A stretch of 64,000 nt of DNA from Magallana gigas (Eukaryota): the NCBI RefSeq assembly GCF_963853765.1, contig NC_088855.1:58280001-58344000 (forward strand). The letters are read 5' to 3'. The notes beneath the pieces are model-generated. The model did not search any database and was not told the DNA's origin. It saw only the letters and a program-made list of their open reading frames with translations. The stretch's first letter is position 1. Each line of letters starts with the position of its first letter. Positions 12,916 through 64,000 of the stretch are shown one piece after another. Made by a program: the position numbers and the translations under genes.

Positions 12916-15900
12916 TCACGTGGCCACCTTGATCATCTTTTTGTTCCGAGCCTCGCGATGTCGCGCCTGGACCTGCAGAAAGTGCTGATGAAGCTCCTTG
13001 AAGTTGATTTTGGAGACGAGAGGCCGTGGGTCCTTGCTGGACTGTGGTCTGTGTAATAGTAAAAGGTAAATGTGGTTAATCAACTGATATAACATTCACC
13101 CAACAGCATTAAAAGAATCAGCTCCTCTTATCACCTCATGCCAAGTATGAAAACTAGAGGTACTGTGAGCAAGCTCACAGTTGATACCCCCCGCTAAGAT
13201 AAAAATCATAATGCGTGTATTTTTCCAAATATAGAAAATATTGGATGAATCTATTTCACTGTCTATTTTCTTTAAATAACAACTGCTCTATTTTTTTAAA
13301 ACTGTTGGTCATAAGCAATATTTGTGTGAAGTAAGAACATTCAATGCTTCTCCATAAGAAAGATAATGACCAGACACGAATTTTGCACTTTTTCTGCCAG
13401 TGACCTTGACCTTGCCCAAATGACCTTTGGTCAAGGTCATGACACACCCTTTGGTCCTTAGCAATATTTGTGTTAAGTTAGAACATTCAATGCTTCTCCA
13501 TAAGAAAGATAATGACCGGACAAGAATTTTGCACTATTTTCCCAACGACCTTGACCTTGCCCAAATGACCATGGATAAAGGTCAAGACACACCCTTCGGT
13601 CATAAGCAATCTTTGTGTGAATTAAGAACTTCCAATGTTTCTCCATAAGAAAGATATGGGCCGGACACAAATTTTGCACTTTTTCTGCCAGTGACCTTGA
13701 CCTTGCCTCAATGACCTTGGGTCAAGGTCATGACACACCCTTAGGTCATAAGCAATCTTTGTGTGGAGTAAGAACTTCCAATGTTTCTCCATACGAAAGA
13801 TATGGACCGGACACGAATTTTTGTATTTTTTCTGCCAGTGACCTTGACCGAATGACCTTGGGTCAAGGTCATGACACACCCTTAGATCATAAGCAATCTT
13901 TGTGTGAATTAAAAACTTCCAATGTTTCTCAATAAGAAAGATATGGACCGGACACAAATTTTGTATTTTTTCTGCCAGTGACCTTGACCTTGCCCGAATG
14001 ACCTTGGATCAAGGTCATGACACACCCTTAGGTCATAAGCAATCTTTGTGTGAAGTAAGAACTTCCAATGTTTCTCCATAAGAAAGATATGGACCGGACA
14101 CGATTGCACAGACAGACGGACGGACAGACGGACGGACAGACGGACAAGGTGATTCCTATATACCCCCCCAAACTTTGTTTGCGGGGGGTATAATGAACAA
14201 CACATTAATTATTGTTCAATTATCCCCATCAAAAATACAAACAATGATTGAATAAAATGAATAAAGGGAAAAAAATTAATATAGAGTTCACTGATAGACT
14301 GACTTTAACTGTGTTTTACAATAGATTCCCAAATTAATGAGGTTGATACAGTAAAACATAGAGTGGGTGATATTGTAGCAGACATTGGTACAAACTTTTC
14401 TTTCATAGCTAGAAGCTGGTAATGGGGTATACAGTCCAGACGGAATCTGAGAAGTTTGAAGGCCTCGGACTGCGGCAGCAGCATTAACAGACCGTACAGG
14501 GAACGGATCAGGTCCTGATTGTGTTGGACGTCCAACAGCTGCAGGCGTAAATCTGTGGCAGAACATAGCATAATCAGTGATAACATTATCAAGTAATCTC
14601 AGCTTAAATCTACATCAGAAAACAGCATCTTTCAGTATGAACTTTAGGCAAAAATATGTGTCAGTGTATGACAGCATTAAACAGGAAGCATAATTCTGTG
14701 TCAGTGTATGGCAGCATTAAACAGACAGCATAATTCTGTGTTGGAGTTTTGCAGCATTGATTATGTCAACATCCAACAATTCTAGGCATAAATATGTGTC
14801 AAAGTATAGAAGCATTAATCATCAGGTGTTTTTTGTGTCAGGATTTCAGGATCATATGGATACATTAATTAAGACCATGCTAAACGGAAAGGTCTTTGTT
14901 TAAATTTGACTGCTTTATGCATAATGACAATTAGGAAACATAATATGAAACATAATGTTAGTTAATTCTTGCCCAAGTATTGCAAACACAGTCATACAAA
15001 CAAAATCAATTCATCTACTTGTAACTATAAGTTGACTTACATGCAAATATGGGAGATTCAATGAGTTGCACTAGTTTGTCTATTTCCTTTAGAAAGTCCA
15101 CCGTGATTTCTAGATCCCCACTGAGGACTGTGTTAAGGAGAGATAAAACAAAAAACACATCCTTTTATCTGTGTGTCTTGTGATTGGCATTTACAATTAG
15201 TTCTTCAACACCACTAGAACAGGAAATAAATATAAGAATTTAAAATGCTGTCGATTTCATTTGGAGTTGAGATCGACTAAGGATACAAGGTCTGTAGAAG
15301 GTCGCTGGCATGGTGATAGTTCTGGGTCAGATAACAGAGGGAGATGGTTGCTATGGGACTGTGACACCAGGACTTGTAGAGACAGCAGAACAGAGCACAG
15401 CTCCCCTGTAAAATAGGGCATTGAGCTGTCAACTTGTTCCACTACACAAATGAGATGACAAAATGTTTTTCATTTCATATTCTATATGGATAATAAACTT
15501 ATCCTATAAAACAACCACTAGTGTCCCCCTCTGACATAAACATCTGCAAGGAGAGGTAGACAGAAAAAATTGAAATGAAAGTCTTACAGAAGAAATGTAT
15601 CTTCTGACAGAAATATCTATACAGTAAAACACGGTTATAGCGAACACGCTTATAATGAATTGACGCTTACAGCGAAGTGAATTTCATTCCCCAAGTCTCT
15701 ATTTCATGTTGTAAACTTGGCGGATATAATGAATTACGCTTATAACGAAGTTAAATTGGCCGTCCCTGGGACTTCATTATAAGCGTGTTTTACTGTATAC
15801 CTCTTATGTGAAAAAATACATACAGCAGACCAACAGATTTCATCTAAAAACCTGTCCCTGACCTGGCATTGAAAAAACTTCATCAGATGAGGACAAACCT

Positions 15901-36363: not shown

Positions 36364-37257
36364 CTATAGGTAGAAATACTTTTCCATTTTACAGCTAGAA
36401 CACACTTTAACTATAATAATGACAGGAGTCATAAATCAACTGTGGAATTTGTTCACAAAAAAGGATTAACACAAATTATAAATGAACTTCCTTGAGTGTA
36501 ATGTAAAAGGAGAAATAATGTAGCAGCCTGGGTTAGTAATTTAAGTTGTTGAACTGTTTTTAAGACAAGCCCTATGCCACTGATGATTAATTCAATTGTT
36601 ACAGATAGTATACGCATGTGTATGTAATTACAGAAGTGTTTTACCTAGGTGTGTTTACTAGTCAGAAAACCCTGTCTTCTTCAGGTAACAGGTTTGTTTT
36701 TTACCTGTGCATTATTAGAAATTATTATGATAGTGTAGTTATTATATAATATCGCCACAAACTTCTGACAAAGTACCAGGAATTGTTAAACTGTTGTAAG
36801 ATAGCCCAATCCCATCGTTTTTTGAATGATGTACATTTGTAGAATAAACTTGTCAATGATTAATGTGTGACGGCTCTAGTCATTGACTGAGACCCAGCCA
36901 TTCTGTTGATGGATGCCACTAACTATAATGTCACTAGGTCAGGATCTAAGAATTCAGGGCCTATGTAACATACATGAATATATTTCTCATAAAAAACACA
37001 ACTCGAAATACCAAACACCAAGATTTTTGTTTATTTCATAGTTTATATACTAGTATCCCATGCATTTGAAAACAACACAATTAAACGCAAGATTAATTAA
37101 TGACTATAGCATACTCAATTTCTTTCAGACAAATGTAAAATAGTTTCTTCACGCATTCCATTTTTATTCAACCGTTTGAAAAAGCACATATATTGTATAC
37201 ATTTGACTTGATTCAAGCTATGAGCTAATCTAGCAGTAGTGTTTGATAGAATGGTTG

Positions 37258-40200
37258 CTATGGAGATTCGGATGACTTCTGCGCATGATCATCCCTCTGG
37301 GAGTCGAATGAGCTGCTGAGTGGATCTCTGTCCTCCTCATCCTCCTCCTCCACAATGACCCTGACCTTGGGTTTGCTGGCCGGGAACTTCTCATTGTCGT
37401 ATTGACTGGACAGCAGGAACCCCCGCGCCTTTAGGAGTGAGGCATTCATGGCGAACACGTTGTCATAGAGGAGTCCGGCCACCAGCCCCCCGAGCAGCGG
37501 CCCCAACCAGTATACCTGATATAACAACACGATTCTTGCATTATCTGAAGAAATTATCATGTTAATACTGAAACAATGGTGTGGCAAAATATCTACCAAA
37601 ATATAGATTATAAACAAAATACAGAGAACGGCATTTTTTGCCTGAACAAATTTATTGTCGGTTATCCCCCCCCCCCCCCCCTTTGCCCTATGTGCCTGCC
37701 CGTGTAACAAGGATTGAAAGATGGGTATTATCCCATCTTTTAAAGGTTAATTTTTTTCTTCTTTACATATTGAATATTGCAGCTGAATCATCATACTTTG
37801 GTAACTGCGTGTCAATATATATGGCAGGCCAAATACAAAAATGAGCTAATCATAATTTCACTATCGATAAACTAGGTTTAACAGTTGTAAAATAATAGTT
37901 TACGGACAAAAAAAACCCCTATAGTTAACGTGATCACCTATGTTTCAAAAGTGTAAAGCTATATATATTAACACTTAAAACACCTATTCGCGATTGCAAA
38001 AAATAGTTTATCTGATAAATATAGATTTACGATTGTGAAACTATGATTAACAACTCTTAACTTTAGTCAACAAATGTGAATTATAGTTTATATTGTTTAC
38101 AGATGTTAATCTATATTTATCAGAGAAATCTTGTTAACAAATAAACTTAAACTGTAGTTTACAACCGTTAAATAAAGTTTTTTTTATGATGAAAGCAACT
38201 GAGTATTGTTAACAAATCGTTAACTATAGTTTACGGTTCGTTAACTATAGTTAACATTTAATTATAGTTTAGGGTTCGTAAACTACAGTTAACAGTCGAT
38301 AAACCAAGTTTGTCGTATGTGAAACTTTAGTAAACGCCGTGATTCAATATTTACCTCTGTAAATGATAGTTTACGCGATCATCAATGTTTCAGAAGTGTA
38401 AACTATCATTTGCTAGTTAAAACAACTTGCGATAGCAAAACATAGTTTTTATCTGATAAATATAGATTTACGATTGTGAAACTATGATTAACAGCTCTTA
38501 ACTATAGTAAAGCGTCAAAGGCCTTATAGGGCGAAAGATTTGACAGCCCACGATTGTAAACTCACTTATGTAATCGTTGTTTAAATAGATGTCACAAAAA
38601 TTGATCTGATAAAATGTTTACACGGTATACTCAACTCACTTTGGAATGTCTTATTTGTTGGTTAAGCCAATATTAAGGTCATTAAACCACTATGTTTGAC
38701 TAGACTACTTGATAAAGCATAAAGTAATGTTACAAGAATTGAACTATATAACCATATACGATTGCGATGCATGTAATTTATGTCTTCGTTTCAAGTTAAA
38801 AAGTACAAAATCAAGGTGACTGTCTGATACCTTGACACTTTCTGAAATAAGAAGATGGCTAATTAAACTGCAAAAATAACTAAATAAAAGTATAAAAAAG
38901 ATGTAGCGATATGTTGGTACAAAAAATACGTGAATTAATGCATTAACAGAAGTAAACTGCGCAGTTTTAAGGGTTTCCCTCGCATCACTCGCCTCTAATG
39001 TACCTCAACAAGCGAGTTAATTACAATGCCTTACATAAAAGAATCACCAAAAATGCATTATAGGTGCATTAATCACAGGAATTGATCGACAGAATAAAAT
39101 GCACACAATGTGTTACAATACAAATGCGTAGTAAGAAGGTTTTTGTATATCAATCAATTTTGAATTTAAAGATGCAGATGCATATCATTGCATAAATTAT
39201 GCGGGGCTTCAAACGATATTTTTAAAATGCATGTTTATATTTGACACCTTTATTGCTTTAAGAATGAAATGCGTTTTTCTTTTCCAAGATGTTGAATTTA
39301 ATTATCAATTACTAAGAGGAAACGAATAACAGCAATTTTGATTTATGGATAAAGATCTACTTGTTTGACTCCGTATTACTCTTTCAGATAACGTATCATG
39401 TAACTTTTTGTGCTCAAAAGGTAAAAGTCAAACCTCTTGTATAAACACCACGTGGGAATATGTGATGTTGCTTTGTTTCAGTTCTCCTTTTACTTACAGA
39501 CCAACAAGGGACACTTTCGGAATAGGTCTATCTTATTACACCAATAATTCAGGGCCTAGTCGGAGATAAAAGGCCCCTGCCTCGATCTTGGGCTACAGGG
39601 AAAAACAATTGTGCAATGTGTCTCAAATTCTATTTCACCGCAATTTGGTCAAATTATCTACTGACTGTCAGTTCAGAGGCAGAATGATTCACGTGTTCAC
39701 CTTTATAGATCTATATTAACGATGGAATCAACGCACGCTGCATCAATTAAAAGATTTAATTGCTTCCTCTGACTGATCTACGCCGCTGTGTTTCTGATTT
39801 ACTGTCAAAAATGCAAGGATGCAACGACATGAAAGTCTCGTCTCATTTAATACGCATGTTTAAGGGCTTACATGTAACAAGGTTTTTCCTTGCGTAAACA
39901 AATGCTATCCTGAATATGGTGAAGAGAAGTGAAAAAAAGTTCAAACTCAGGAAAGCCCGAGAACTTAGTACGATTGACTCAATGATACAATTGTTCCATC
40001 ATCGAATATTCTCTCTATCTTTTTGCAAATATCTTTAGTTAACACTCTAGCAGCTTTGCTCTTTTGCAAACTTTGTATATTTGCATCTTCGAGGAGAAAC
40101 ATGTTCTAAATACAGCGAAGTACATTAATTGAAGCGTTTAATAGGGAGTTACTCCAGAAAAGTTTCTACGTGATGTGTTTTGACTGACCTTTGTCCTATC

Positions 40201-43200
40201 AGATCGTAGCTGGGCGGAGTTAAGGCATTGCCGCTCGTGACTTGAATGAGAGAGAGAGAGAGAGAGAGTGAATTGAGTAAATTGTAAGTGTTGCCGATGA
40301 AGGAATAATCATTAGTTATAAACTTGCAAACAAATTAATTAAGGTCTGTATATAAAAATTACATGTATATCCTATATTGGTATAACTTTAAAGCGTTTTA
40401 AAGAACGACTGTGAAAATTTCTTTGGCCGCGCGCGTCGACAACATGTACATGGATAAGAATGACGTAGCTAACCAACTAAATTTCCTGGCATGGAGTCCG
40501 AGGATACGGGCATTAAATATTTTGAAATGCGAACGAATGATCACTTATGAACATGATGAATTTAGATGTAGTCTAAAGGAAAGGTAACGCAGGCGGATGC
40601 TTAGTGGAAAAATGAAACGATGGCGGACAAATTCGTCCTAAGGTAAAGAATGTTTCACACTGAGTAACCATGAAGAAAGTTTTTATACAAAGTAAATTTA
40701 CAACCTATGTTAAATTCCAGGAAGATTCGGCAAACTTTGATTTGATATTAACGGTAACACTTGACAGTTGTATTAAAAACAGTTTTATAAATACATTTGT
40801 ACAGTCTTTGATGTTTGACATTACCTCATCCTATTACTGATCTATATATAGACATCGTTGTTCCCTGGTTAAAGAATTTCAAAACACTTCAAAGTTTCAT
40901 AAATTTATAAGATATACTAGACCGTGATTTGTCATTTTGTAGGATAACTATTGTTAGATAGTTCGCTCATCTGCGTCATCTATAATTTACTCCATTAACC
41001 AGTTAACTCTCTCTCTCTTTTTCTCTCTCAAATTAAGTCACGAGCGGTAATGTCTCAACTCCGCCTTCTACAATCTGATTGGACAAATGTCAGTCAAAAC
41101 ATTACGTAACAACTTTTCTGGAGTAAATGCCCATTAAACGCTTTAATGTACCTTGCTGTATACTAATATAGGATATACATGTAATTTTTATATACAGACC
41201 TTAATTAATTTGTTTGCAAGTTTATAATTAATTCTTAATTAATGATTACTTCTTCATCGGCACCACTTATAATTTACTCAATTCTCTCTCTCTCTCTCTC
41301 TCTCATTCAAGTCACGAGCGACAATGTTTTAACTCCGCCCAGCTACGATCTGATTGGACAAAATAGTCAGTCAAAATATTACGTAGAAACTTTTCTGGAG
41401 TTAACTCCTTAATTAAACGCTTCGATGTACTTCGCTATATTACTGATCTAAATCTAGACATCGTTGTTCTCTCGTTAAGAATTTCAAAACACTTCAAAGT
41501 TACATAAATTTATAAGATATACTAGACCGTGATTTGTCATTTTGTAGGATAACTATTGTTAGATAGTTCGCTCATCTGCGTCATCTATAATTTACTCCAT
41601 TAACCAGTTAACTCTCTCTCTCTCTTTTTCTCTCTCAAATTAAGTCACGAGCGGTAATGTCTCAACTCCGCCTTCTACAATCTGATTGGACAAATGTCAG
41701 TCAAAACATTACGTAACAACTTTTCTGGAGTAAATGCCTATTAAACGCTTTAATATCAACAATAGTTATAAAATGACAAATCAAGGTCTAGTATATCTTA
41801 TAAATTTATAAAACTTTGAAGTGTTTTGAAATTCTTTAACCAGGGAACAACGATATCTATATATAGATAATGGGATGAGGTAATGTGTAAGAAACTGTTT
41901 TTAATACAAGTGTTACCGTTAGTATTCTAATCAAAGTTTGCCGAATCTTCCTGGAATTAAACATAGGTTGCAAATTTACTTTGTATAAAAACTTTCTTCA
42001 TGGTTACTCAGTGTGAAACATTCTTTACCTTAGGACGAATTTGTCCGCCATTGTTTTATTTTTCCACTACGCATCCGCCTGTGTTGCCTTTCCTTTACAC
42101 TACATCTAAATTCATCATGTTCATAAGTGATTATTCGTTCGCATTTCAAAATATTTAATGTCCGTATTCTCGGACTCCATGCTAGGAAATTTAGTTGGAT
42201 ATAAGCTACGTCATTCTTATCCATGTACATGTTGTCGACGCGCGCGGCCAAAGACATTTTCACAATCGTTTTTTAAAACGCTAAAGTTATACCAATATAG
42301 AATATACATGTTATTTTTATATACAGATCTTAATTAATTTGTTTGCAAGTTTATAATATTGATTATTTCTTCATCGGCACCCCTTATAATTTACTCAATT
42401 CACTCTCTCGCTCTCTCTCAAGTCACGAGCGGCAATGTCTTAACTCCGCCCAGCTACGATCTGATTGGACAAAGGTCAGTCAAAACATTACGTAGAAACT
42501 TTTCTTGAGTTAACCCCTATTAAACGCTTCAATGTACTTTGCTGTAACTATTGTTGATAGATAGTTCGCTCATCTGCGTCATCTCTAATTAACTCCATTA
42601 ACCAGTTAACTCTCTCTTTTTCTCTCTCTCAAATTAAGTCACGAGCGGTAATGTCTCAACTCCGCCTTCTACGATTTGATTGGACAAAGGTCAGTCAAAA
42701 CATTACGTAACAACTTTTCTGGAGTTAAACGCTTCAATGTACTTTGCTGTAGAACACACGCAGAACAATAACAATTACAGCGAAAGGGATTAAGTATGAA
42801 TATTCTAAAATCCTCACCTGATTCTGCCGTCTAATGTTTGGTCCAGATATGAAGTTGGTCACTCAATTTGAGTCCCCATTCTAAAACGATCACTTACCCA
42901 TGGTCTTGCTATATAAGCTGTATGTAAATGTGACGTGATGACATATTCAATGGTCTAGCTAAATAAGCCGTATATAGATGTCACGTGATGACTTATCAAG
43001 TGGTCTACCTAGAAAAGCCGTACAATGTACAGATGTCGCATGATGACTTACTAGCAAGATAAGCCCGATATAGATGTCTTGTGGTGATTTACTAGCTAGA
43101 TAAGCCCATATAGATGTCATGTGATGACTTATTAGATAGATAAGCCCATATAGATGTCATGTGATGACTTACTAGATAGATAAGCCCATATAGATGTCAT

Positions 43201-46014
43201 GTGATGACTTACTAGATAGATTAGCCCCTTGTAGATGTCACATGATGACTTACTAGCTAGATAAGCCCGATATAGATGTCACTGGTTGACTTTCTAGCTA
43301 GATAAGCCCATATAGATGTCATGTGATGACTTACTAGCTAGATAAACCACATATAGATGTCACGTGATGACTTACAAGCTAGATAAGCCCCATATAGATG
43401 TCACGTGATGACTTCCTACCTAGATAAGCCCCATATAGATGTCACATAATGACTTAATTACTAGTTAGATTATTCCCATACACATGTCGCATGATGACTT
43501 ACTAGCTAGATAATCCACATAATTTTATAGATGTCGCATGTTGACTTACTAGCTAGATGATCACCATGTAGATGTCACGTGACAACTTACTAGCTTGATT
43601 ATCCTTATATTAATGTCACGTGATGACTTACTAGCTAGATAATCCTTATATTGATGTCATGTGATGACTTACCCAGTGGTACTCCCAGTAATTCATGATG
43701 ACAGCGGGCCCAAAACTCCTGGCAGTATTCATGCTGGAGCCCGTGTACTGGATCTGCCGGGTACAAATATAATCAAATGAATAGCAATTTGATCAATCTT
43801 GGTACATTTCATAAATAGTAAAGTTTTTTCATTAGCGGATTTAAATGATAGTCGAAGATATCGAGAGAGAGAGAGATGAATGTAAATGTTTAGCAATCAC
43901 TGAGAAGATATATACTCAGTATCTGCAAGGACACCTTCGTTCTCCCGCCCCAGAGTTACCCATGGTTTCTGATAACCCGTATGACAAAACGATAAGAGAT
44001 ATCGAACAACTGAATCATCAAAAATAAATGTTGTACTTTTGTCGGAATCCAACTCGGTAAATATTTGAGATACCGTGCACTGTATATATACCCTGTGTGG
44101 TATTCTTCTAACATGTAAAGTGTCTGCCCCCTTTTGTCGACGCACGTGTAAAAAATATATAGAATGTATAGGCCTGCATGTATTTGTAAACCTTTACGGG
44201 TTAGAATGAAAAAAATGCCGCAAAAGAATATGTTTACATTTTTCTCAATTGAGTCATTCCTGAAACTAAAGTATTTTAAAGTAATATCTAGTAAGTATCA
44301 ATTGACGTGTTTTAAATATTACGTTTATCATCGTGTATTTCAAAATACATGCATCATTAACTTTCCATATTTATAGCTTTTAAAAAGAATTTTTAAAAAA
44401 TTCAAAACAACAAACATCAGGTTATACATGTAAGGATTCCAGGTAAGTCTATTAGTGAACGTGTTCTACGTAAAGGTGTCGAAATCAAATCATATCCGTC
44501 ATCCTTTTAAGACTAAGATTGCTTATATAACTTGCAGTTCATTAAGTTATGTAGTTTTGTGACGGATGGGGTTTTGGTATGTGCCTTAAACTCTCCGTGG
44601 GCGATCAGATGAATAATCAAAACAAAGATATTGTCATGTAACTGTAACACTTGATTGATAAAAACGCAATTCTAAATTGGAGGGGAAGAAAGTAAAAAAA
44701 AAAATTCTGTTGTATAAAAAATTTACACCACTTCCTCTTGTGCAATGACATCTTCAGAACAAGAAGAGGGACAGTTAACAGAAGTTTTACTGCGATGTTT
44801 ATTTCCATGAATATAATGTTTATCAAATGAAATGGTCCTTTATATTAATATATCAAATACCACCCCCCCCACCCCAATAATGTATCATGGTGTCAAAGTG
44901 TCTCGCTAAATGTCAAAATGTCAAGCTTTAATTGCCTGTTGGATTATTTCTTTATCTGAGTTATTTGGAAACTGTTTCAGTTTTCACTACTGGATTGGAA
45001 CTTTAAGAGGGGCAATCTGAATGTTGAATGTTGACCCCCTCCACAGATAACCTGGTTTATATATCACATCAAAGACAGAATCGGAGGCACGGTGACCCAG
45101 GGGGACTCTTCTTTATATACGGTAGCAGGGTACGACTTTCATTGTCAACCGATATCTGTCAAGTTCGATTTTTAACAATTTCCGAACACCTAACGAGTGA
45201 TGCTGTGAGTTTTGTTTATAGAATAATGGGAATTGTTCCGAAAATCTACTGCAACAAATCTCATAATTATACTTTAAAATCTCTAGTGGAGATAATTTTG
45301 AATAGAAAAATTTATCTTTAGAAAAGAATACATAGTTTCATTTCTACGTTTAGCTTCATAAGATTTATGTACCACTGATGTAAAACGCTTGAAACTTACT
45401 GCAAATAAATGGCACATTGTGACAGAGAGACCGATAGACAGCGGGAACGACCCGTTCAAGTCCTTCCTTTTCTTGTCACAGGACGCAAACACCGTCAGGA
45501 CCAATATCAGGGTGATGAAAAACTCCACTCCAAAGGCCTGGGCCCCCGTCAGCTCAGGGTTCACCATGGTCAGCCCCAGGGAGCCCCTGTGGCGGTGGCT
45601 GGCGGGGGTCAGCCCGTAAAGAATGGCGGCGCCAATGATGGCACCAATACACTGGCTCAGCAGGTAGAAGATGGCGCGCGCCAAACTGATGCTCCTGGTG
45701 ACGAAGAACCCGACGGTCACCGCGGGGTTGATGTGGCCCCCGCTCACGTGACCAATGATCCATACGGCGGTCGCCACACTGAGTCCGAAACACAGAGCGA
45801 TTTGCACCAACTTTCCATCATCGTCCCAAGTTACCACGGACCCGCATCCAACCATGGTCAGGATGAGGGTCCCCAAAAGTTCCGCACCCACGGCGCGCCA
45901 AAACCTAAGGGAGCGAATGTCATCTAGACTGGTTGCCATTCTGGCCTTGCAGAGTCTCCGAGCGCACCCTGACTGTCCAGAACCACTGCCTGAGTACTTA
46001 GTATCTCTGTTCAT
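37258..46014 (-). CDS. Aquaporin A (AQP4/AQP1-like water channel)
   Basis: Exons 46014-45400 (second in-frame ATG at 45939; SGGHINPAV), 43753-43673 (IQYTGSSMNTARSFGPAV) and 37515-37258 (VYWLGPLLGG..stop), all phase 0; ar/R filter residues F-H-S-R. Confidence 0.95.
40095..42750. repeat. Fold-back / segmental repeat complex in aquaporin A intron 2
   Basis: About 0.8-kb inverted arms (approx. 40095-40955 and 41755-42545), a ~320-bp direct duplication (40830-41150 vs 41440-41755), and six copies of a GTCACGAGC..ACTCCGCC..TGATTGGACA..TTACGTA module. Confidence 0.85.
42925..43672. repeat. ~40-bp minisatellite, about 18 copies, starting exactly at the aquaporin A exon 2 donor
   Basis: Unit GATGTCAYGTGATGACTTACTAGCTAGATAAGCCCATATA (period 40 at 43113, 43153, 43193); on the minus strand most units contain GTAAGT. 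Confidence 0.92.
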
Positions 46015-47632
46015 AAGCCGGGGAGGGGCTTCACTTATTACAGAACGCTAAGACTGAAGGAGTTGCATTAGGTTCCCTGACTGCGGACTATTTATCCTTT
46101 AAGAGTATTGTAAAAATCCGACATTCCAGATCCGTGTTCTCGCTCCCCCTTCAGATGGTCACCTTTACTACAGGTAAATCAGTATAGATATCAAACTACC
46201 CTGATCCCACGATAAACGGACGCGTCACGTGCAATAGGTGTATTCTGTACAGTCCTGGAAGATAGATGATCACTTGGCGTAATCCTCACCTTTATATAGA
46301 AGTAGTAAAGCGGTCGACACCACGCTCCGGTGAGGATAACACCGATCAAACAAATATTATAAATTGCCAAGACAAAAAACTAGTCCAATGGGGACTCATA
46401 GATGAGGTTTCGCTCTAATAATGATTATATTTAGTTTATAGAATTATAAATACACGAACACATGAACATGTATGGAGGTATTTGTTGGAGTATGGGATTA
46501 GCTCATTAACTAATGGTCAGTATTCGGACGCTCATAATGAAAACAGGAATCGGACTTCGAGGAGGGACAGTTCCCTTTATTGTATTCCAAACGTTAGGGA
46601 AACATGAAGAACAGAATAAACCCAACATCGGGGGGTTACAAGTACAGTAATATTACAGTAATATTACCAAGCATTCAGTATGGGATTGATTCGGTGTGTT
46701 TGATGTTAAGGATACTTATTTAGAGTAGACTTGTTTGCAGTGCATGCATGAGAAACCGATTTTTTTTTTGTAGTTTTATGTCAACAACACCCGGAGATAG
46801 GACAGAAATATGCCATTATATATATCTTATGTAATATTTCACCTAGGTGCATTCTAAGGTAGTGTAAAAACTTCTCTCTACCTGTGAAGTCAGTCCAAAC
46901 TACTGTTCAGAGAAAATCATGAACATTTTTTATTCATTGATAAAAACGGATGATAGATGGCTTATAAAATTGATACATTTGAATAAATTAATAATATCAT
47001 AAAATAGAGGGATGTTTTATTGACACATAATTTATACTATTCAACAATAAATGGTATATAAAAGAGAAAGTGGGTTTTATGTGGAGTAATAAGTCGTGAT
47101 TTTGTAGTTATAAATTCAAGAAAGTAAAAAAAGGGGGTGACACTTTTATGATTCAAAGGCCTTTGATGGTGAGGTAGACAGATAGGATTGTATGAAATAT
47201 AATTTTAAAAAGCAAATACATATGAACATGCAAAAGGGGACTATAAAATGATTGGACACTTATTGATCAGGTCTTTGGGTAGGTAACTGAGATTGTTGTT
47301 TCTCCGGTCTTTGCTGATAGGTTTTGTCAGCTTATTCTGAGGTTATTCATCGCAATCATTTTACCTTAATCCTTTCTCAATGATCCTTAAACTCAGCTTC
47401 ATTTGAAATCAATTTCACACAGATAAATCAACCCAAAATTCCAAGTCCTCTTGATAAATGGTCTCCTAGACTTCCAAGACAGTCTCTCGATTTATTACCC
47501 CCCCCCCCAAAAAAAAAATACCAAATTTATGGTCCTTCTCTCTAGCGAAAACATTCCTTGTATTACTGTACTATTTTTCGAATAAGACACGGACCTCTTG
47601 ATCCATGCCCATCTATGTATCTTCAGATGATA

Positions 47633-48355
47633 AAAATAGTGCCTGTTTTGGAGGGTATCCGTTGGAATTGCCAGAGAAAACCATTGTCAAGCGGAGGGTG
47701 ACAATGTTTTCGAGGGGTGTTAATTTGAACGGTTACCATAAAAAACAGGCACTATTTATTTTATTATACTGAATATCTTAATTTAATAGAAAATTTTACT
47801 GCTTTTATTTAGAAATAACGTGAATTCTACGGCGAACCGAAGGCGCGTACTTTACGTGCATGTAACAATTCGTTGTGTTACCCGTTGCCAAGTGTGTTGC
47901 TAACGCTGAGGGTAATAGAACGGATTATCAACTGCGTCTAAACCAATCAAATTTCAGTATTTAAAATGAAAGTATAATAAAGCATATTATTATACTTTCA
48001 TGTTAAATACTGAAATCTGATTGTATTAGACGCACTTAATAATTCGTTCTATTACCCTCAGCGTTAGCAACATCCTTGGCAACGGGTAACACAACGAATT
48101 GTTACATGCGCGTAAATTATGCGCGTACGGTTCGCCATAAAATTCAAGTTATTTCTATATAAAAGCAGTAAAGTTTTCTTTGAAATTAAGACATTCAGTA
48201 TAGTAAAATGAATAGTGCCTGTTTGGGAGGGTAAGAGTTGAAATTAACACCCCTCAAAAACCATTGTCAACCTTCGCTTCGCGTCGGTTGACAATGGTTT
48301 TCTCGGGGTGTCAATTTCAACTCTTACCCTCCCAAACAGGCACTATTTATATAAT
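47633..48355. mobile_element. Two head-to-head copies of a hairpin-ended non-autonomous element
   Basis: 47633-47980 is the inverse of 47986-48355 around the spacer AGCAT; each distal end is a ~125-bp hairpin AATAGTGCCTGTTT...AAACAGGCACTATT. Confidence 0.82.
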
Positions 48356-49882
48356 ATAATATTCCTCTAACTTCACATTTGCCACTTCTGTCACATAGTT
48401 GTACTTTTTGTGCCGTGCGGTAGTTGTACATGCAATCATCGCAATCAGAGCAATGGCAGTTCCTATAGCCACGTACACCAATATCACTGTTCATTGGCCG
48501 TCAAGTTAGATCGACCAGACGGTATTTTTGTCAATGGAAATGTTTATTTTATTTCATTACGCTCACATTTGAACGAACGTATTGTCTGATTGTCTTAAGC
48601 ATTTTGTTACATTAAATATTTGTAGATTTACTAAACCAAAATCAGTCAGTAAATACTCATCTTATTTTATTTGAAGAGCTGCGTAATTAAAAGACACTTT
48701 AACGACTCGGAGGCTCTTTGATGAACAAAGTACATAATAAATGATTTTATTGCAAGCAGGTGAGGTGTCATTAGGGACGACACGTTAAACCACCGTGCAC
48801 TCTAGACATTTGACCCTTTTTGTAGGACATGCAAGTTTGACATAACGGAATTTTAAAAACAGAAAGTGTGCATGTTCTCTAAAAGTTTTACTGCGACGTT
48901 TCACTTTTTTCCGAAAACTATGACATCTATACCTTTTTCGGTGTTTTTTTTCTTTCTTAACCTTCCTTTTTGTGGTCATTGTCTAGAGTATGCATACGTC
49001 TCGTGTCTTGATTTCGTAAAAAGTAAACAAGAAATCATATTGACGTAAGCGTCAAATGGGCCGCAAAAATATAATTGTTTTATGAATCATTGGTCGTTTA
49101 CATAAAAACACACCACAAAGAAGAAAATAAAAGTTGGTTGTACTAATTTTTATGGTAAATTTTAATATACTTTCAGCAGCTTGTTTTGAAGTTTAACATT
49201 TTACTATTATCATAAAGAATCGAGTTCGTTACTGAAAGCATTCCTAACGGTAATTGTATGATCATTGCGATAGTATGAAGTAATAATTTGATTTGTACAT
49301 TACTCTAATACAAAGTTCAACTCATCATTTTTCTCTTGGAGATTATGTATTTCAAACCATTTTGGTTTTTTGTTGTTGCATTGTATTGAATTAAAACTTG
49401 ATGCATTAGTTTTGGACCACATCATGAAGAAAAAATATATCATTTACATAAAATTTAATGACATTCAGGTCTTTAGTATTTCAGGTCTTTAGTATGTCCC
49501 GCATACCTATCCCGATGCCATTCTCTCACCCAGAGGTCGTGTTACACAAGCTCCGCTTACAGCTTGTGTAGCAGGACCTCTGGTGAGAGAATGATCCCAA
49601 TGCATTGTTTTGAAAAGAATGAAGAACTCCGAATCTTTCCGAATAGATTATAGTCTCGATAAAAACGCACCAAGCACGATAGTCTACTAAGTATGATCTA
49701 TTTTTCATTTACGAGTAAAACAAAAAATATGTGATAATTTTTAAAAGGCATAACACATATTTTTACATGCAATTTTTTTTTAATTCATAAAAAGAAGCAT
49801 AATATTAATTCTATTAAATAAGAAGTATCCCACAGAAACGCAGTAACAATATCTAAATAACGGACCGCCGGTAATGATCTCA

Positions 49883-49920
<38 letters not shown>

Positions 49921-59700: not shown

Positions 59701-62700
59701 ATACCTGTAAACTTTTTATGCAATGAAAATAAGAAATAAGAAAAGGGGCGAGTGTACCAGTTTTTCACATTAATTAAGAGTTTCTTTTTATTTTTTAATG
59801 AGTTTTTTAAATTCTATAACAATGTCGTTAATTATAAGAATTTATCAAACAAGCTTAGGTAAAGAGTGGCCTACTCCTGACGATAGTCGGAAAACGGAAA
59901 TACTGCGCCATCTCGCACCTGCTTTGAATTGGTTTTAGGACGAATAATTAACTCCATGTACAATGTAATGTTTACTACTGTATACCTTACCTGGGACTGT
60001 GTTGTCCAGCAGGAACCCGACCACGCCCCCAACAAACATGGAGGTACTCAGTAACACAACAATCACCTGATCCGCCTCTCTGTTACCTGGGGAAAACCAA
60101 TTATAATGATGTCACACTACGTGTATACACTGTTCTAAATATGGTTAAATCTAATGTAACATAGTTATGTATTCGCCATTGCGAATTAAATGCTTGATAC
60201 CTGTATTTATGACACCTTTCCTTTTCTCGAGATAACTTGGGATCATAAGCCCTAGTAATAGGGATAATCCTATTATACACAGGTTTCGACCCGATGACAA
60301 ATTAACGAATTGTAGGCTGGAAAGTCCTACGGAAGTAACCATTCCAAAACTAATGACAACGATTCCACCCAACACCGGCTTGGGCATCATTGTCAACAAC
60401 GCGCCAAATTTTCCAAATATCCCACAGAGAAGGAAGATAATCCCTGCCGCTTGAAAAACTCTTCTACTTGCAATCTGTTGAGTTGAGATCATTGCATTCA
60501 ATTATTATATGTTTTGCAATATGTAATAAAATTATTACTATTTCTTAACGTCATTTTATATTTATACCTTGTGCGTAATGTATTTACTATGTTTATTATA
60601 ATATTTTCACACCTTTGTGAATCCAATGGCGCCGACATTTTGACTGTACGATGTTGTCGCGCCCCCTGATCCTACAGCTCCGGATATAAGGCTGCCAAAA
60701 CCTTCTATAGCAATGCCCCTGTTCACAGCATGCGCAGGCGGTGGTGATTCGCCGGATATTCTTGCACATGCGTAGTAATCTCCGACGGATTCTATGATGG
60801 ACGTCAGTGTGGCCGCCATCATTCCCATGTAGCTCGCCGCACTGAGTGTCGGCATCCCCCACTGACCTATTCCAACGACCGAACAAAGACACCGCTATAA
60901 TCACTATATACACAAATATCCATATTTCTGTCTTTGTCGGTGATAACATTTCAAATCAATTTTGAAGCCTATAGCCCAATATTTACATTTTCTACTGTCT
61001 TTGTCAGTGATAACATTACGGATCCTTTTTGAAGCCTAAACCCCGATAATTTCATAAAAGATAAGGGACAAAAAATGGGCGTGTCTTTTAGCATAACCAA
61101 AAAAACGATATTGGCTGCGCCGCGTAGTAATACATAATATGTGCTACTTGAAAAAAATACTCACTTTAATTTATGTTTAAAAAGTGTAGAAATTGGAAAT
61201 ATTGTACATAAATATAAGTAATACGGAATCATTCTTTTAATTTTATGAGGTGATAATTTTGGTTGGAGCGTGGTCAAATCTATAATAAAGCCCGTCAGGC
61301 TTTATGGATTTGACCAATCCCCGACTAAAATTATCACCTCATAATACTCTTATTCCTTGAATACCGGTACATATCCAACTAGTCCCCGTTACTGATAGTA
61401 ACTGTGTGTACTTGGGTACTTGGCGTTGTGTAAGACGCGGACGCGTACTGATAATAACTGTGTGTACCTGAGTACTTGGCGTTGTGTAAGACGCGGACGC
61501 TTACTGATAATAACTGTGTGTTCCTTGGTACTTGGCGTTCTGTAAGACGCGGACGCTTACTGATAATTATTGTGTGTACCTGGGTACTTGGCGTTGTGTA
61601 AGACGCGGACGCTTACTGATAATAACTGTGTGTACCTGGGTACTTGGCGTTGTGTAAGACGCGGACGCTTACTGATAATAACTGTGTGTACCTTGGTACT
61701 TGGCGTTCTGTAAGAAGCGGACGCTTACTGATAATTATTGTGTGTATCTGGGTACTTGGCGTTGTGTAAGACGCGGACGCTTACTGATAATAACTGTGTG
61801 TACCTGGGTACGGGAAGAAGAACCACTTTGCGTTCTGTAAGACGCGGACGCTGGCGTCCGTTCTGGCGTGGTAGTCCAGGTCTTTGGGGTTGTCAGAGAA
61901 GACGTTGGCCGCCGTCAGAATCCCACACACCATCCAGGACAATAGCACCGCTAGGATAACCTGATATATAGGTCTGGTATCGTTAGATGTTAGGATAAAA
62001 TGTAGGACAATAGCATCGTCAGGATAACCTGACATATAGGTCTGGTAACGTTAGGGGTCAGGATAAAATATAATCGGTATAGACTATACAAGTGCACGAG
62101 TTTCCATAGAGTTGTCATTTCTCATTTCATAAACCAAACAAAAAACCACACAATCCATACTATGTTCTGTTAGTTTTACATCATGTTCAATTTAATACCG
62201 TAATATGCTCAACTATTGTCATTGTCTATTGTCGTTGGTTTTCAATCAATTTTTGTCAGAATGCAGTGACTTGGTACTGGTCAATCCCGAACGTGTTACA
62301 CTACATAACTCGGCCATAATAAAATAAATGAACTACGAAAGGCAAAGCGAGATAACTCTTGCATTGGTACCTGCCTTCCGGGAGAACAATAGGACGGGTC
62401 ACGTGTCTTGATGTACCTAAATTGACAGAGACCAAAACCACTCGAGGAAACTATAGAATTTCACTAACCGGAAGTAGTTTGAATGCTGGGTAGTTGATCC
62501 TCACACATCCTTCCTTTCTGCGGTAGACCATCATTGGAATGGTGATGTTACCGAGATAGAGGGAGAATAGAACTACAAGGAACAGGGTCCTACAACAAAA
62601 GAAGCCAACTAACTAAACTTCCCTGGCCAAGTGTTTCAAATCAGCCACGACCAGACTAATTAGCTAATCGCAAAGATGTCAACCTTATTCAAGGCCTTGA

Positions 62701-64000
62701 AGATGAATTCAATGACTATTCAATCTCTGCAACCTTAAGCATCAAAATTCAGAAGTAAAACTGTGCCACTCGTGGGAAAAGTGGATAACAATCATCGCGA
62801 TAGTCTTTTTACCATCTTTCCGGAGATCAACAGTTCTACATCTAAGGATTTAACTTGTACATTTAGTTGTAATTGTATATATAGGTTTATAATGTAATTT
62901 TATAATAAGAGTAAATAGGTTAGGGCGGTCTTACAGCGCCGCTATCCCCCACTGGGTCTCACAGAACTGGATGGACACGTTGATCAGAGACAGCCCCACC
63001 AGTGTGATTGTAGGAACGATTGTCATTGGTCCAATAAACCTCAGCAGCCAGCCCAGCAGACCCGTGGCACCAATCAACACTTGGGTTAGAGACGCCAGCA
63101 TGATTCCACCCTGAATCTAAATAAAAATATATTTACAGTGAAATTGGGCGGTACTGGTGTTGATTCTACTTTCTAGAATATCATTGGCTATAAACAATAT
63201 ATTATAATAAATCTGCTATAATTTAAACTTTCATTATAAGACTTTAACTAAGTGATGATTATTCCAAGTACAAGAAGAAAAGAATCGTGCACAATTGTTC
63301 ATAAAGTGAAACATTTTTTTGAATTGGATGACAATACATTATTTTAGGATTACTTGCGCTTCAATAGTATTTCTAAACACAACTATGACAAGAGTTTACA
63401 AACATTCATGTCACTGTCTTTGAAATAGTAAATTTCTAACGCAAAAATGCATGGAATTTTCAAAGAGATGTAGAATTTCCGTTTAAAATACCAAATACAG
63501 AACAAAGGAATGGTAAACATGGTTTAAGGTATCAACCATTTACATTCTCTGCCTTCCCACCGCCTCGCCACCCACACTCACCCTCGCCTTCCCCACTCAC
63601 CTCTCTGAGTCGTGACTGCCAGACCTCTGTGGGGTCGGAATAAGGTACCGTATTGTTACTGCTGCCATTGGTCGAATTCATGTTTGCTGCCGTAACTAAA
63701 ATCACAAGTATAAATTTCCAGATAGTGCTTAGATTTACATGGATATAAAACGAACCTTTGTCATAAAAATGTTTAATTTTTGGGTCACAGAGAATGAAAA
63801 ATTAAAATCCCTTACCTCATATCAAACAGAGTTCAGATTTACAAAGAATTTGGTTGTAAAAGAATAGTGACCACTTCCCTTAAAATTGGGTTTGGAACGG
63901 CAATTCTGGTTAACAAATGAACAATTGGAAAAATTAGGGCACAAACCCTTCATATCCGGGCACTTCCACATCGGGAGACTCATGAGGGCGGCAATGGCGG
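56777..64000 (-). CDS. SLC23 / nucleobase-ascorbate transporter (NAT) family protein; 5' end lies outside the window
   Basis: Exons beyond 64000-63947, 63695-63601, 63116-62935, 62589-62469, 61960-61804, 60866-60613 (NAT motif [10 protein letters not shown]), 60474-60201, 60086-59991 (FLLDNTVPG) and 56985-56777 (GTHEERG..YDLP..PFLPSF, stop); phases are consistent. Confidence 0.94.
58149..58889 (+). CDS. Neuronal calcium sensor (neurocalcin/hippocalcin-like), 187 aa, nested in the last SLC23 intron
   Basis: Exons 58149-58526 and 58704-58889; MGKQNSKL myristoylation motif; CPKG in EF1; EF loops [24 protein letters not shown] and [12 protein letters not shown]. Confidence 0.95.
61222..61358. 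mobile_element. Imperfect palindrome, second copy of the 27568-27714 family
   Basis: GGAATCATTC..TATGAGGTGATAATTT..AAAGCCCGTCAGGCTTTAT..AAATTATCACCTCATAAT..ATTCC. Confidence 0.7.
61385..61855. repeat. 56-bp minisatellite, about 7-8 copies, derived from an SLC23 exon end plus donor
   Basis: Minus-strand unit GCGTCCGCGTCTTACACAACGCCAAG-TACCCAG|GTACACACAGTTATTATCAGTAA; period 56 (61561, 61617). Confidence 0.93.
61935..62070. repeat. 68-bp tandem duplication of an SLC23 acceptor junction
   Basis: GGATAACCTGAYATATAGGTCTGGTA at 61954 and 62022. Confidence 0.85.

What the first reader, a model, noticed from the sequence alone, without database searches (positions are those of the whole stretch)
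14545..63610. Window-wide pattern: minisatellites made from exon-intron junctions (splice-site echo arrays)
Seen in sequence: about ten tandem arrays in four unrelated genes start exactly at a functional splice junction, and their units contain the splice signal, usually with flanking exon sequence. The cases are VAC14 exon 4, 7 and 10 donors; VAC14 exon 6 and 15 acceptors; the MARVEL-like exon 2 acceptor; the aquaporin A exon 2 donor; and two SLC23 donors plus one SLC23 acceptor. That is roughly 10 of the ~68 junctions I mapped. The only long arrays not anchored this way are the 15-bp Spire repeat and the transposon cores. Arrays always extend into the intron, the functional site is the exon-proximal copy, and distal copies tend to be more decayed. 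Stages run from 2-3 copies to about 110 copies to eroded relics. Inference: a junction-targeted duplication process (e.g. R-loop or co-transcriptional breaks, microhomology-driven slippage, or rolling-circle copying of a small circle) filtered by selection against exon disruption. It would inflate introns, supply decoy splice sites and could drive intron sliding or NMD-coupled regulation. I cannot check whether this has been described for this lineage.
Basis: partly seen in the sequence, partly recalled or inferred. Interest (0 to 1): 0.88.

Follow-up and report, generated by a model that had tools for sequence, protein, structure and literature searches.

The report
Splice-junction minisatellites in oyster genes
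Several oyster genes in this window carry tandem repeats copied from their own exon-intron junctions (up to 112 copies of a working splice site), yet only the copy next to the exon is used; such repeats are already known from amphioxus ("mirages") and a few human genes, but they are unusually dense here.

Summary
In VAC14 (minus strand, 15 exons mapped by homology and RNA-seq) four arrays begin at a splice junction. They are a 28-bp x69 array at the exon 4 donor, 29-bp x112 at the exon 6 acceptor, 78-bp x5 at the exon 10 donor, and a decayed 22-bp array at the exon 7 donor. Eroded copies also lie at the exon 15 acceptor. Aquaporin A has one such array and SLC23 has three. The MARVEL-like case rests on an exon I could not verify.

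RNA-seq joints, a transcript-derived protein and protein continuity show that only the exon-proximal site is used.

If seeds fell uniformly over the array-free introns, about 1 of 10 arrays should span a junction. I observed 8 (P about 2e-7). Genome-wide, triple consensus donors at minisatellite spacing occur a few-fold more often than control words.

The kind is already known: "mirages" in amphioxus, and human F7, IFI6, CBS and LMNB2. I found no mollusc report. This scan had already noted the same thing elsewhere in this genome (OSTF1, ERCC6L, MRPL38 and others), and I verified the MRPL38 case.

A junction-targeted duplication process is possible but not shown. No decoy-site use was seen. The assembly gap lies inside intron 3 and touches no array.

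The parts
14408..30154 (-). VAC14 gene, exons 1-15. Exon coordinates: 30154-30054, 27161-27011, 26281-26114, 25762-25700, 23367-23260, 19907-19798, 19564-19458, 18837-18699, 18356-18219, 17652-17460, 16823-16588, 16073-15899, 15405-15287, 15120-15041, 14552-14408. Later exons lie below 14250.
   Evidence: tblastn with full-length VAC14 proteins. The exons join into one continuous open frame. RNA-seq joints with GT..AG ends cover nine introns.
23791..25724 (-). 28-bp x69 array at the VAC14 exon 4 donor (junction 25700|25699). The unit is AACTATTGGACAGGCTGATCAAG|GTAAG.
   Evidence: All 69 copies are in exact register and all keep GT. 66 of 69 keep AGGTAAG. Divergence is about 1.8%.
23684..23801 (-). 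Older, decayed 17-bp array (ATCAAG|GTAAGAATCTA), distal to the 28-bp array. It is an earlier generation from the same donor.
19887..23138 (-). 29-bp x112 array at the VAC14 exon 6 acceptor (junction 19908|19907). The unit is ATAACTATACTGGATTCTGTG + TATTACAG.
   Evidence: All 111 upstream copies keep AG and 106 keep TTACAG. Divergence is 5.4%. The exon start is fixed by protein continuity (SW|[11 protein letters not shown]).
19190..19464 (-). Decayed ~22-bp donor copies (..GGGTAAG..) after VAC14 exon 7 (junction 19458|19457).
   Evidence: The RNA-seq joint 18837->19458 uses the first donor.
17083..17487 (-). 78-bp x5.2 array at the VAC14 exon 10 donor (junction 17460|17459). The unit is 28 nt of exon plus 50 nt of intron.
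   Evidence: 35 reads and 2 contigs join 17460 to 16823. The array's words are held at 0.49-0.57 in 20 DNA runs of 9 studies.
14553..14810 (-). Eroded copies of the VAC14 exon 15 acceptor plus exon start, at about -57, -105 to -205 (TRF 40-bp x2.5) and -250.
   Evidence: P = 0.04. The RNA-seq joint 14552->15041 uses the proximal acceptor.
31680..32085 (+). 111-bp x2.7 array, with 23- and 19-bp sub-repeats, upstream of a putative acceptor at 32073|32074. The units hold ..ttaatcccttaa|CTCCTGTCAC.
   Evidence: 38 of 48 identical, P = 0.01. The exon is unverified: no Pfam hit and no homologue.
42900..43672 (-). 41-bp x15.5 array, with distal 50-bp units, starting at the GTAAGT of the aquaporin A exon 2 donor (junction 43673|43672).
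   Evidence: The exon map comes from the transcript-derived protein P0271: exon 1 45939-45391, exon 2 43753-43673, exon 3 37521-37261. Pfam MIP profile positions are continuous across exons 2 and 3.
61389..61851 (-). 56-bp x7.6 array at an SLC23 donor (junction 61804|61803). The unit is the exon end with a 15-nt internal deletion, the donor, and 23 nt of intron.
   Evidence: The exon aligns to SVCT1 residues 254-308, ending at ..PYP. Three of seven decoys have lost GT or the preceding G.
61936..62069 (-). 68-bp x2 duplicate of the SLC23 acceptor plus the first ~25 nt of the same exon (junction 61961|61960).
63563..63601 (-). 19-bp x2.1 repeat starting at the GTGAGTG of another SLC23 donor (junction 63601|63600).
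   Evidence: The exon is not confirmed by a tool. The next exon, which starts IQGGIMLAS, matches Xan_ur_permease.
25964..26092 (.). Assembly gap inside VAC14 intron 3. It was not filled.
   Evidence: Exons 3 and 4 are adjacent in the protein and in frame. The nearest array is 240 bp away.
7709..8079 (+). Comparison case: the 15-bp x25 array in a Spire intron (7680-8172). It starts 29 nt into the intron (donor at 7679|7680) and is not built from a junction.

Best explanation
These are junction-spanning minisatellites of the 'mirage' or F7 type.

1. Birth (inferred). A short tandem duplication of 17-111 bp happens to include a splice junction. It probably arises by slippage at microhomology. At exon 4, for example, AGAAC in the exon matches AGAAT in the intron.
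2. Silence (shown). The duplicate is harmless because the spliceosome uses only the copy next to the exon. Every other copy then lies inside the intron.
3. Expansion (homogeneity and nested generations shown; process inferred). The array grows and is homogenised by replication slippage or unequal exchange, reaching 69 and 112 copies here. It later decays.
4. Renewal (my preferred explanation, inferred). Purifying selection keeps the exon-proximal copy intact, so that copy keeps seeding new rounds at the same junction. Purely intronic arrays have no such copy and simply erode. This persistence, acting in a minisatellite-rich distal chromosome region, would account for the excess at junctions.

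The arrays look like neutral passengers that inflate introns, not regulators.
For: Units contain exon sequence plus the splice signal at six or seven junctions.

Only the exon-proximal site is used:
- RNA-seq joints at the exon 7 and exon 10 donors and the exon 15 acceptor.
- Transcript-derived protein P0271 across the aquaporin donor.
- Unbroken protein alignment across exons 4/5 and 5/6 of VAC14.
- The SLC23 exon aligns to SVCT1 up to the junction.

The arrays are young and homogenised. Register is exact, with 1.8% and 5.4% divergence.

Nothing suggests selection on the decoys. GT is kept in 69 of 69 copies and AG in 111 of 111, which is no more variable than other positions. Unit lengths show no preference for multiples of three.

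Successive generations occur at one junction:
- 17-bp then 28-bp units at exon 4.
- 50-bp then 41-bp units in the aquaporin.
- Relics at exon 15.

Excess over uniform seeding is P = 1.9e-7.

The same structures occur elsewhere in the genome. MRPL38 is verified: its exon end aligns to mL38 up to the junction. The ERCC6L reading frame runs into the first unit.

The kind is described in amphioxus and in human genes, with the same silent pseudo-sites.
Against: - Persistence bias is inferred and not measured.
- A few-fold genome-wide excess and a far larger local excess (five junctions in VAC14 alone) could equally reflect a mutational hot spot.
- Two arrays start exactly at intron base +1 with little or no exon sequence (aquaporin, SLC23 19-bp). 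That hints at a break at the junction itself.
- RNA depth was low, so decoy use below about 8% would be missed.
- The two largest arrays were not covered by reads.
Confidence: 0.7

Rival explanations
1. A mutational process aimed at junctions. Germline transcription or splicing (polymerase pausing, R-loops or breaks at 5' and 3' splice sites) makes the DNA at exon-intron boundaries prone to short tandem duplication. Arrays are therefore born preferentially there.
For: - In-window excess, P = 1.9e-7.
- Both donors and acceptors are affected, so the common factor is the junction and not one motif.
- Two arrays begin exactly at intron base +1.
- Five junctions of one housekeeping gene are hit.
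- Consensus-donor triples give 219 matches against 34 and 31 for control words.
Against: - The junction sits anywhere within the unit (exon share from about 0 to 82%), as expected of random seeds that merely include it.
- The genome-wide excess is modest.
- An unbiased 180-kb block gave no verified case.
- No direct evidence of breaks or R-loops exists.
- Hairpin potential is notable in only 2 of 9 units.
Confidence: 0.2
2. The arrays are functional. They would act as ladders of decoy sites for NMD-coupled regulation or isoforms, as U1 or U2AF sponges, or (for the aquaporin array) as a cluster of CACGTG E-boxes serving as an enhancer.
For: - The decoys are intact and strong (AAG|GTAAG x68, TTACAG x106).
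- Use of any decoy would give a premature stop.
- In human IFI6 and CBS the first pseudo-sites are used.
Against: - No decoy joints appeared in two polyA RNA-seq runs or two RNA contig sets.
- Splice dinucleotides are not conserved more than neighbouring positions.
- Units, lengths and genes are unrelated to each other.
- Arrays decay at exons 7 and 15.
- Three of seven SLC23 decoys are already broken.
Confidence: 0.05
3. Chance plus selective reporting. Minisatellites fall anywhere in introns, and the reader noticed those near exons.
For: - The ancestral introns were short (about 130-500 bp), so a 20-110-bp seed spans a junction fairly often.
- This window was picked after the fact from many.
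Against: - The test already uses array-free intron lengths: 0.98 expected, 8 observed, P = 1.9e-7. That survives correction for the 210 windows read in this genome.
- Only two or three intronic arrays in the mapped genes are not junction-derived.
Confidence: 0.04
4. Assembly artefact. The arrays or their copy numbers are collapsed or inflated repeats.
For: An assembly gap lies in the same gene, 21 bp after the exon 3 donor. Copy numbers were not checked with long reads.
Against: - Words of the 78-bp array are held by 20 DNA runs from 9 studies.
- Pre-mRNA reads fall on that array.
- The arrays have internal variant structure.
- A transposon sits inside the ERCC6L array.
- Similar arrays occur at many loci.
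Confidence: 0.01

Closest known systems
Amphioxus 'mirage' minisatellites (Adh3, globins BflGb6 and BflGb9, troponin C, PGBD5)
   Same: Tandem duplications of 10-160 bp that span an intron-exon boundary, at either donors or acceptors. Many copies keep AG/GT, yet normal splicing is not disturbed. They recur in several genes of one genome, and their origin is unknown.
   Different: The phylum differs (mollusc). Copy numbers here are far higher (69 and 112, against 2-6 in the globins). Ten arrays sit in one 64-kb window, and there is a statistical excess over uniform seeding. Somatic or allelic instability was not tested here.
Human junction VNTRs: F7 IVS7 (37 bp), IFI6/6-16 (12 nt), CBS IVS13 (31 bp), LMNB2, PDGF
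   Same: The first monomer spans the exon-intron boundary, so identical donor pseudo-sites follow the authentic one. In F7, LMNB2 and PDGF only the most upstream site is used.
   Different: The human cases are isolated and are all donors. Here acceptors are multiplied too. In IFI6 and CBS one or two pseudo-sites are used, which was not seen here.
Intron gain by tandem duplication across AGGT (the Rogers model; segmental duplication generating an intron)
   Same: A tandem duplicate carrying splice signals is spliced out, so the duplication is silent.
   Different: In that model the duplication lies inside an exon and creates a new intron. Here an existing intron is lengthened and no new intron position was found.
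Tandem alternative splice sites (NAGNAG, GYNGYN)
   Same: Repeated splice signals lie next to each other.
   Different: Those sites are 3-12 nt apart, are both used, and change the protein. Here the units are 17-111 bp, number up to 112, and the extra copies are unused.

Membership tests
Junction-spanning ('mirage' / F7-type) minisatellite | Head-to-tail array of units of roughly 10-160 bp | tested here: met
   TRF periods are 17, 19, 22, 28, 29, 41, 56, 68, 78 and 111 bp, with 2 to 112 copies.
Junction-spanning ('mirage' / F7-type) minisatellite | The first (donor) or last (acceptor) unit contains the functional exon-intron boundary, that is exon sequence plus the splice signal | tested here: met
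   Met for VAC14 exons 4, 6 and 10 and for the SLC23 56-bp and 68-bp arrays. The aquaporin and SLC23 19-bp arrays start at intron base +1 with almost no exon sequence. The MARVEL-like exon is unverified.
Junction-spanning ('mirage' / F7-type) minisatellite | Normal splicing persists and the authentic, exon-proximal site is used | tested here: met
   RNA-seq joints at the exon 7 and exon 10 donors and the exon 15 acceptor. Transcript-derived protein P0271 for the aquaporin. Protein continuity for exons 4-6. The two largest arrays were not covered by reads.
Junction-spanning ('mirage' / F7-type) minisatellite | Length polymorphism or instability between alleles | not tested
   Only indirect evidence. 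The 78-bp array's words are held at 0.49-0.57 in other DNA runs, against 0.69-0.81 for the neighbouring 14300-17050 stretch in other DNA-like runs.
Alternative 5' splice-site ladder (IFI6/CBS type, pseudo-sites in use) | Transcripts joined from the second or third repeat copy | tested here: not met
   No joint from a decoy reached 3 reads, against 35 reads for the authentic exon 10 donor and 12 (two listed joints) for exon 7. The detection limit is roughly 8%.
Introner / transposon-borne splice sites | Dispersed copies with terminal repeats and target-site duplications that carry the splice sites | tested here: not met
   Each unit is derived from its own gene's conserved exon sequence and differs between loci. 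The transposon-like repeats in the window (146-bp satellite, 180-bp inverted-repeat element) are not at junctions.

The most novel reading that the evidence does not exclude
The oyster germline has a duplication process coupled to transcription or splicing that acts preferentially at exon-intron boundaries. It would have produced on the order of a thousand junction minisatellites, would drive rapid intron expansion, and would supply raw material for intron sliding or gain. The same process may explain amphioxus 'mirages'.
Probability: 0.2. Interest if true: 0.8.

Novelty: new member of a known kind. Interest (0 to 1): 0.45.

Why it matters
- **Splice-site choice.** Arrays of 68 identical strong donors, or 111 intact acceptors, beside one working site are natural tests of how the spliceosome chooses among identical sites. 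A genome with many such loci offers replicated cases.
- **Intron size.** Introns can grow more than ten-fold quickly without any transposon.
- **A possible mutational mechanism.** If the junction excess holds genome-wide, it points to an unexplained mutational or persistence bias at exon-intron boundaries, shared with amphioxus. That bears on models of intron gain by tandem duplication.
- **Annotation.** These arrays are traps for gene predictors and for short-read assembly.

Tried and rejected
- **Orthologous introns in other oysters: failed.** The one exhaustive protein search returned mostly fragments, plus eight VAC14 proteins of 600 residues or more that are only about 55% identical to the oyster gene. 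Searching with the snake VAC14 returned vertebrates only. An alignment of exon pieces to it was too poor to use as a profile. Close relatives P0001 and P0002 sit on 1-kb transcript contigs. No Crassostrea genome record carrying a contig came back.
- **The unbiased 180-kb block on contig 1.** It holds mostly transposon-derived repeats. One 45-bp x11 array may abut a donor, but the flank could not be shown to be an exon.
- **Hairpin-driven slippage as a general cause: rejected.** Only 2 of 9 units fold better than shuffles.
- **A steady proximal-to-distal decay gradient: rejected** for four of the five arrays measured.
- **AGGTGAGT triples against their reversed word (68 against 44 matches): uninformative.** The reversed word itself contains GTGAGT.
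- **The ERCC6L exon: no solved-structure match**.
- **The MARVEL-like exon: no support.** No Pfam hit and no homologue.
- **The original 'mirage' paper (PMC117041): not held**.
Full report
**What the window is.** The window is G000 contig 3, 58,280,001-58,344,000, of a 564-Mb genome in 29 contigs. That places it 2.7 Mb from the end of a 61.04-Mb chromosome. Run labels and an earlier follow-up note in this scan point to the Pacific oyster.

The genes that matter here are:
- VAC14 on the minus strand.
- Two aquaporins. Gene A has exons at 45939-45391, 43753-43673 and 37521-37261. Gene B lies at 54795-53388.
- An SLC23-type transporter, with Xan_ur_permease hits.
- An EF-hand gene.
- A Spire-like gene.
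- A putative small membrane-protein gene that I could not verify.

**Exon map.** One VAC14 exon, used as the query in the exhaustive protein search, retrieved full-length VAC14 proteins. tblastn with these proteins placed 15 exons. With GT..AG boundaries the exons join into a single open frame.

Public polyA RNA-seq reads and RNA contigs laid on 14250-19990 gave joints with GT..AG ends for nine introns. These fixed the boundaries of exons 6 (donor side) to 15 to the base.

The assembly gap (25964-26092) lies in intron 3, 21 bp after the exon 3 donor and 201 bp before exon 4. Exons 3 and 4 are adjacent in the protein alignment and in frame, so no coding sequence is hidden there. No array touches the gap. 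I did not try to fill it.

- *Exon 4 donor.* The exon ends ..AACTATTGGACAGGCTGATCAAG|GTAAG, and these 28 bases are then repeated 69 times in exact register. All 69 copies keep GT and 66 keep AGGTAAG. The mean is 0.5 mismatches per copy. Beyond this array lies an older, decayed 17-bp array (ATCAAG|GTAAGAATCTA) built from the same donor.
- *Exon 6 acceptor.* 111 copies of ATAACTATACTGGATTCTGTG-TATTACAG lie upstream of the working acceptor. All keep AG and 106 keep TTACAG. They make up about 3230 of the 3352 bases of intron 5.
- *Exon 10 donor.* 28 nt of exon plus 50 nt of intron are repeated five times.
- *Exon 7 donor.* It is followed by decayed 22-bp units, each with GGGTAAG.
- *Exon 15 acceptor.* Eroded copies of the acceptor plus exon start lie upstream.
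- *SLC23.* One exon (61960-61804) aligns to SVCT1 residues 254-308. It has a 68-bp duplicate of its acceptor and a 56-bp x7.6 array of its donor. The 56-bp units carry the exon end with a 15-nt deletion. A further SLC23 donor is followed by a 19-bp x2.1 repeat.
- *Aquaporin A.* The exon 2 donor starts a 41-bp x15 array.
- *MARVEL-like case.* The similarity of its units to the putative junction is convincing (38 of 48 identical). The exon itself has no support from Pfam or from homologues.

**Which copy is used.**
- RNA-seq gives 35 reads and two contigs for the first exon 10 donor.
- It gives 12 reads (two listed joints) for the first exon 7 donor.
- It gives 7 reads plus contigs for the proximal exon 15 acceptor.
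- No joint from any other copy reached the 3-read listing threshold.
- For aquaporin A, the protein P0271 from a transcript contig runs ..EYHW|VYWLGP.. across the first donor. The Pfam MIP profile is continuous across that junction.
- For VAC14 exons 4-6, the conserved protein sequence leaves no room for extra units.
- Use of any decoy would bring an early stop codon.

**Is it more than chance?** I removed the arrays to recover the ancestral introns. That left 17.8 kb with 48 junctions in the four well-mapped genes. I then asked how often a seed of each unit's length, dropped uniformly, would include a junction. The expectation is 0.98 of 10 arrays. Eight do so, P = 1.9e-7. Counting only the six strongest gives P = 1e-4. 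The first value survives correction for the 210 windows read in this genome.

Beyond the window the evidence is thinner:
- Three exact AGGTAAGT words spaced 10-40 bp apart occur 219 times, in at least 27 separate arrays among the 100 matches listed.
- The reversed word gives 34 matches in 13 arrays.
- A permuted word gives 31 matches in 6 arrays.
- The second donor word was uninformative, because its reversed control itself contains GTGAGT.
- An unbiased 180-kb block on contig 1 held mainly transposon-derived repeats and no verified junction array.
- Two sites noted by other first readers were fetched. At MRPL38 the exon end aligns to mL38 residues 152-191 right up to the junction, and 15 nt of exon plus GTAAGT is repeated about 30 times. 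At ERCC6L the open frame runs into the first 48-bp unit, and a transposon has since landed inside the array. No solved structure covers that part.

My reading is that junction arrays are widespread in this genome, perhaps of the order of a thousand by rough extrapolation. This window, and VAC14 above all, is a hot spot.

**What it is.** The kind is known:
[quoted passage not shown] They are reported in Adh3, globins, troponin C and PGBD5, at both kinds of boundary, without disturbing splicing and with unknown origin.
- In humans, F7, IFI6, CBS, LMNB2 and PDGF carry minisatellites whose first unit spans the boundary. In F7 only the most upstream donor is used, which led to an oriented-scanning model.
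- I found no report for molluscs and no genome-scale test.
- An earlier follow-up in this scan reached the same classification for an OSTF1 array in this genome.

**How it most likely works.**

Shown:
- The units are copies of the gene's own junction.
- The extra copies are intact but unused.
- The large arrays are very homogeneous and in perfect register, so they are young or continually homogenised.
- Splice dinucleotides are no more and no less variable than other positions.
- Unit lengths show no preference for multiples of three.
- Several junctions carry more than one generation of units.
- Some arrays are decaying.

Inferred:
- Birth is by a short tandem duplication at microhomology.
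- Growth is by slippage or unequal exchange.
- The excess at junctions arises because the exon-side copy is kept intact by selection and keeps seeding new rounds, while purely intronic arrays erode.

The main rival is a duplication process coupled to transcription or splicing that strikes junctions directly. Points in its favour are the size of the local excess, the involvement of both donors and acceptors, and two arrays that begin exactly at the first intron base. Against it, the junction sits anywhere within the unit, the genome-wide excess is modest, and there is no direct evidence. I give it 0.2.

A regulatory role for the decoys has no support in the reads. Hairpin-driven slippage is not general. 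Assembly artefact is unlikely, because words of the 78-bp array are held by 20 DNA runs from 9 studies.

**Limits.**
- RNA depth was low. The two largest arrays were outside the stretch laid, so minor decoy use cannot be excluded.
- Copy numbers were not checked with long reads.
- Orthologous introns of other oysters could not be reached.

**Verdict.** This is a new member of a known kind, with an unusually dense local cluster and a real but unexplained bias towards junctions.

Noticed in passing
window 15594-15800 and 26585-26765: A ~180-bp element with inverted ends (ACAGTAAAACACG...CGTGTTTTACTGT) sits in VAC14 introns 12 and 2. RNA depth on it is 50-100 times that of the exons, on both strands, and reads break off at its ends. 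It looks like an abundant, transcribed interspersed repeat of MITE type.
   Followed up: partly
whole genome: Many minisatellite hits, donor-bearing and control alike, lie within a few Mb of contig ends. On contig 3 they fall at 0.17, 0.18, 0.62, 53.2, 56.0 and 57.3-57.6 Mb of 61 Mb. The window itself is 2.7 Mb from the end. This is an impression only and was not tested.
   Followed up: no
L001 4254-4765 (G000 contig 3, about 41.652 Mb): A ~510-bp element with terminal inverted repeats (CACTAGTGATG...) is inserted inside the ERCC6L junction array, splitting it into 6 and 11 copies. The array therefore predates the insertion.
   Followed up: partly
window 37261-37521 and 43670-45939: The aquaporin coding piece at 37 kb is the last exon of aquaporin A and not a separate gene. 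Intron 2 is 6.15 kb. In the paralogue B the same intron is 447 bp and has no array.
   Followed up: yes
window 16693: RNA reads and contigs carry a 6-base insertion (CCCCGC on the plus strand) in VAC14 exon 11. It is in frame, within the glycine run. Many reads differ from the reference by 5-10%, so the individuals sampled are quite divergent.
   Followed up: no
window 25964-26113: The only assembly gap starts 21 bp after the VAC14 exon 3 donor. Gaps often mark unresolved repeats, so another junction array could be hidden there. This is pure conjecture, and the gap was left untouched.
   Followed up: no
window 7709-8079; C1 block (L014) about 110976-111965: The Spire intron's 15-bp unit TCAATGGGGTCATCA shares its core with 11-bp arrays (TCATTGGGGTA and its complement) on contig 1. 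TCAATGGGG also occurs in the next Spire exon (8213-8221).
   Followed up: no
window 13307-14146; C1 block 59173-59497 and 44760-44792: The 146-bp satellite, and the GACAGACGGACG repeat beside it just downstream of the mapped VAC14 exons, recur on contig 1. They belong to a dispersed element and not to a junction.
   Followed up: partly
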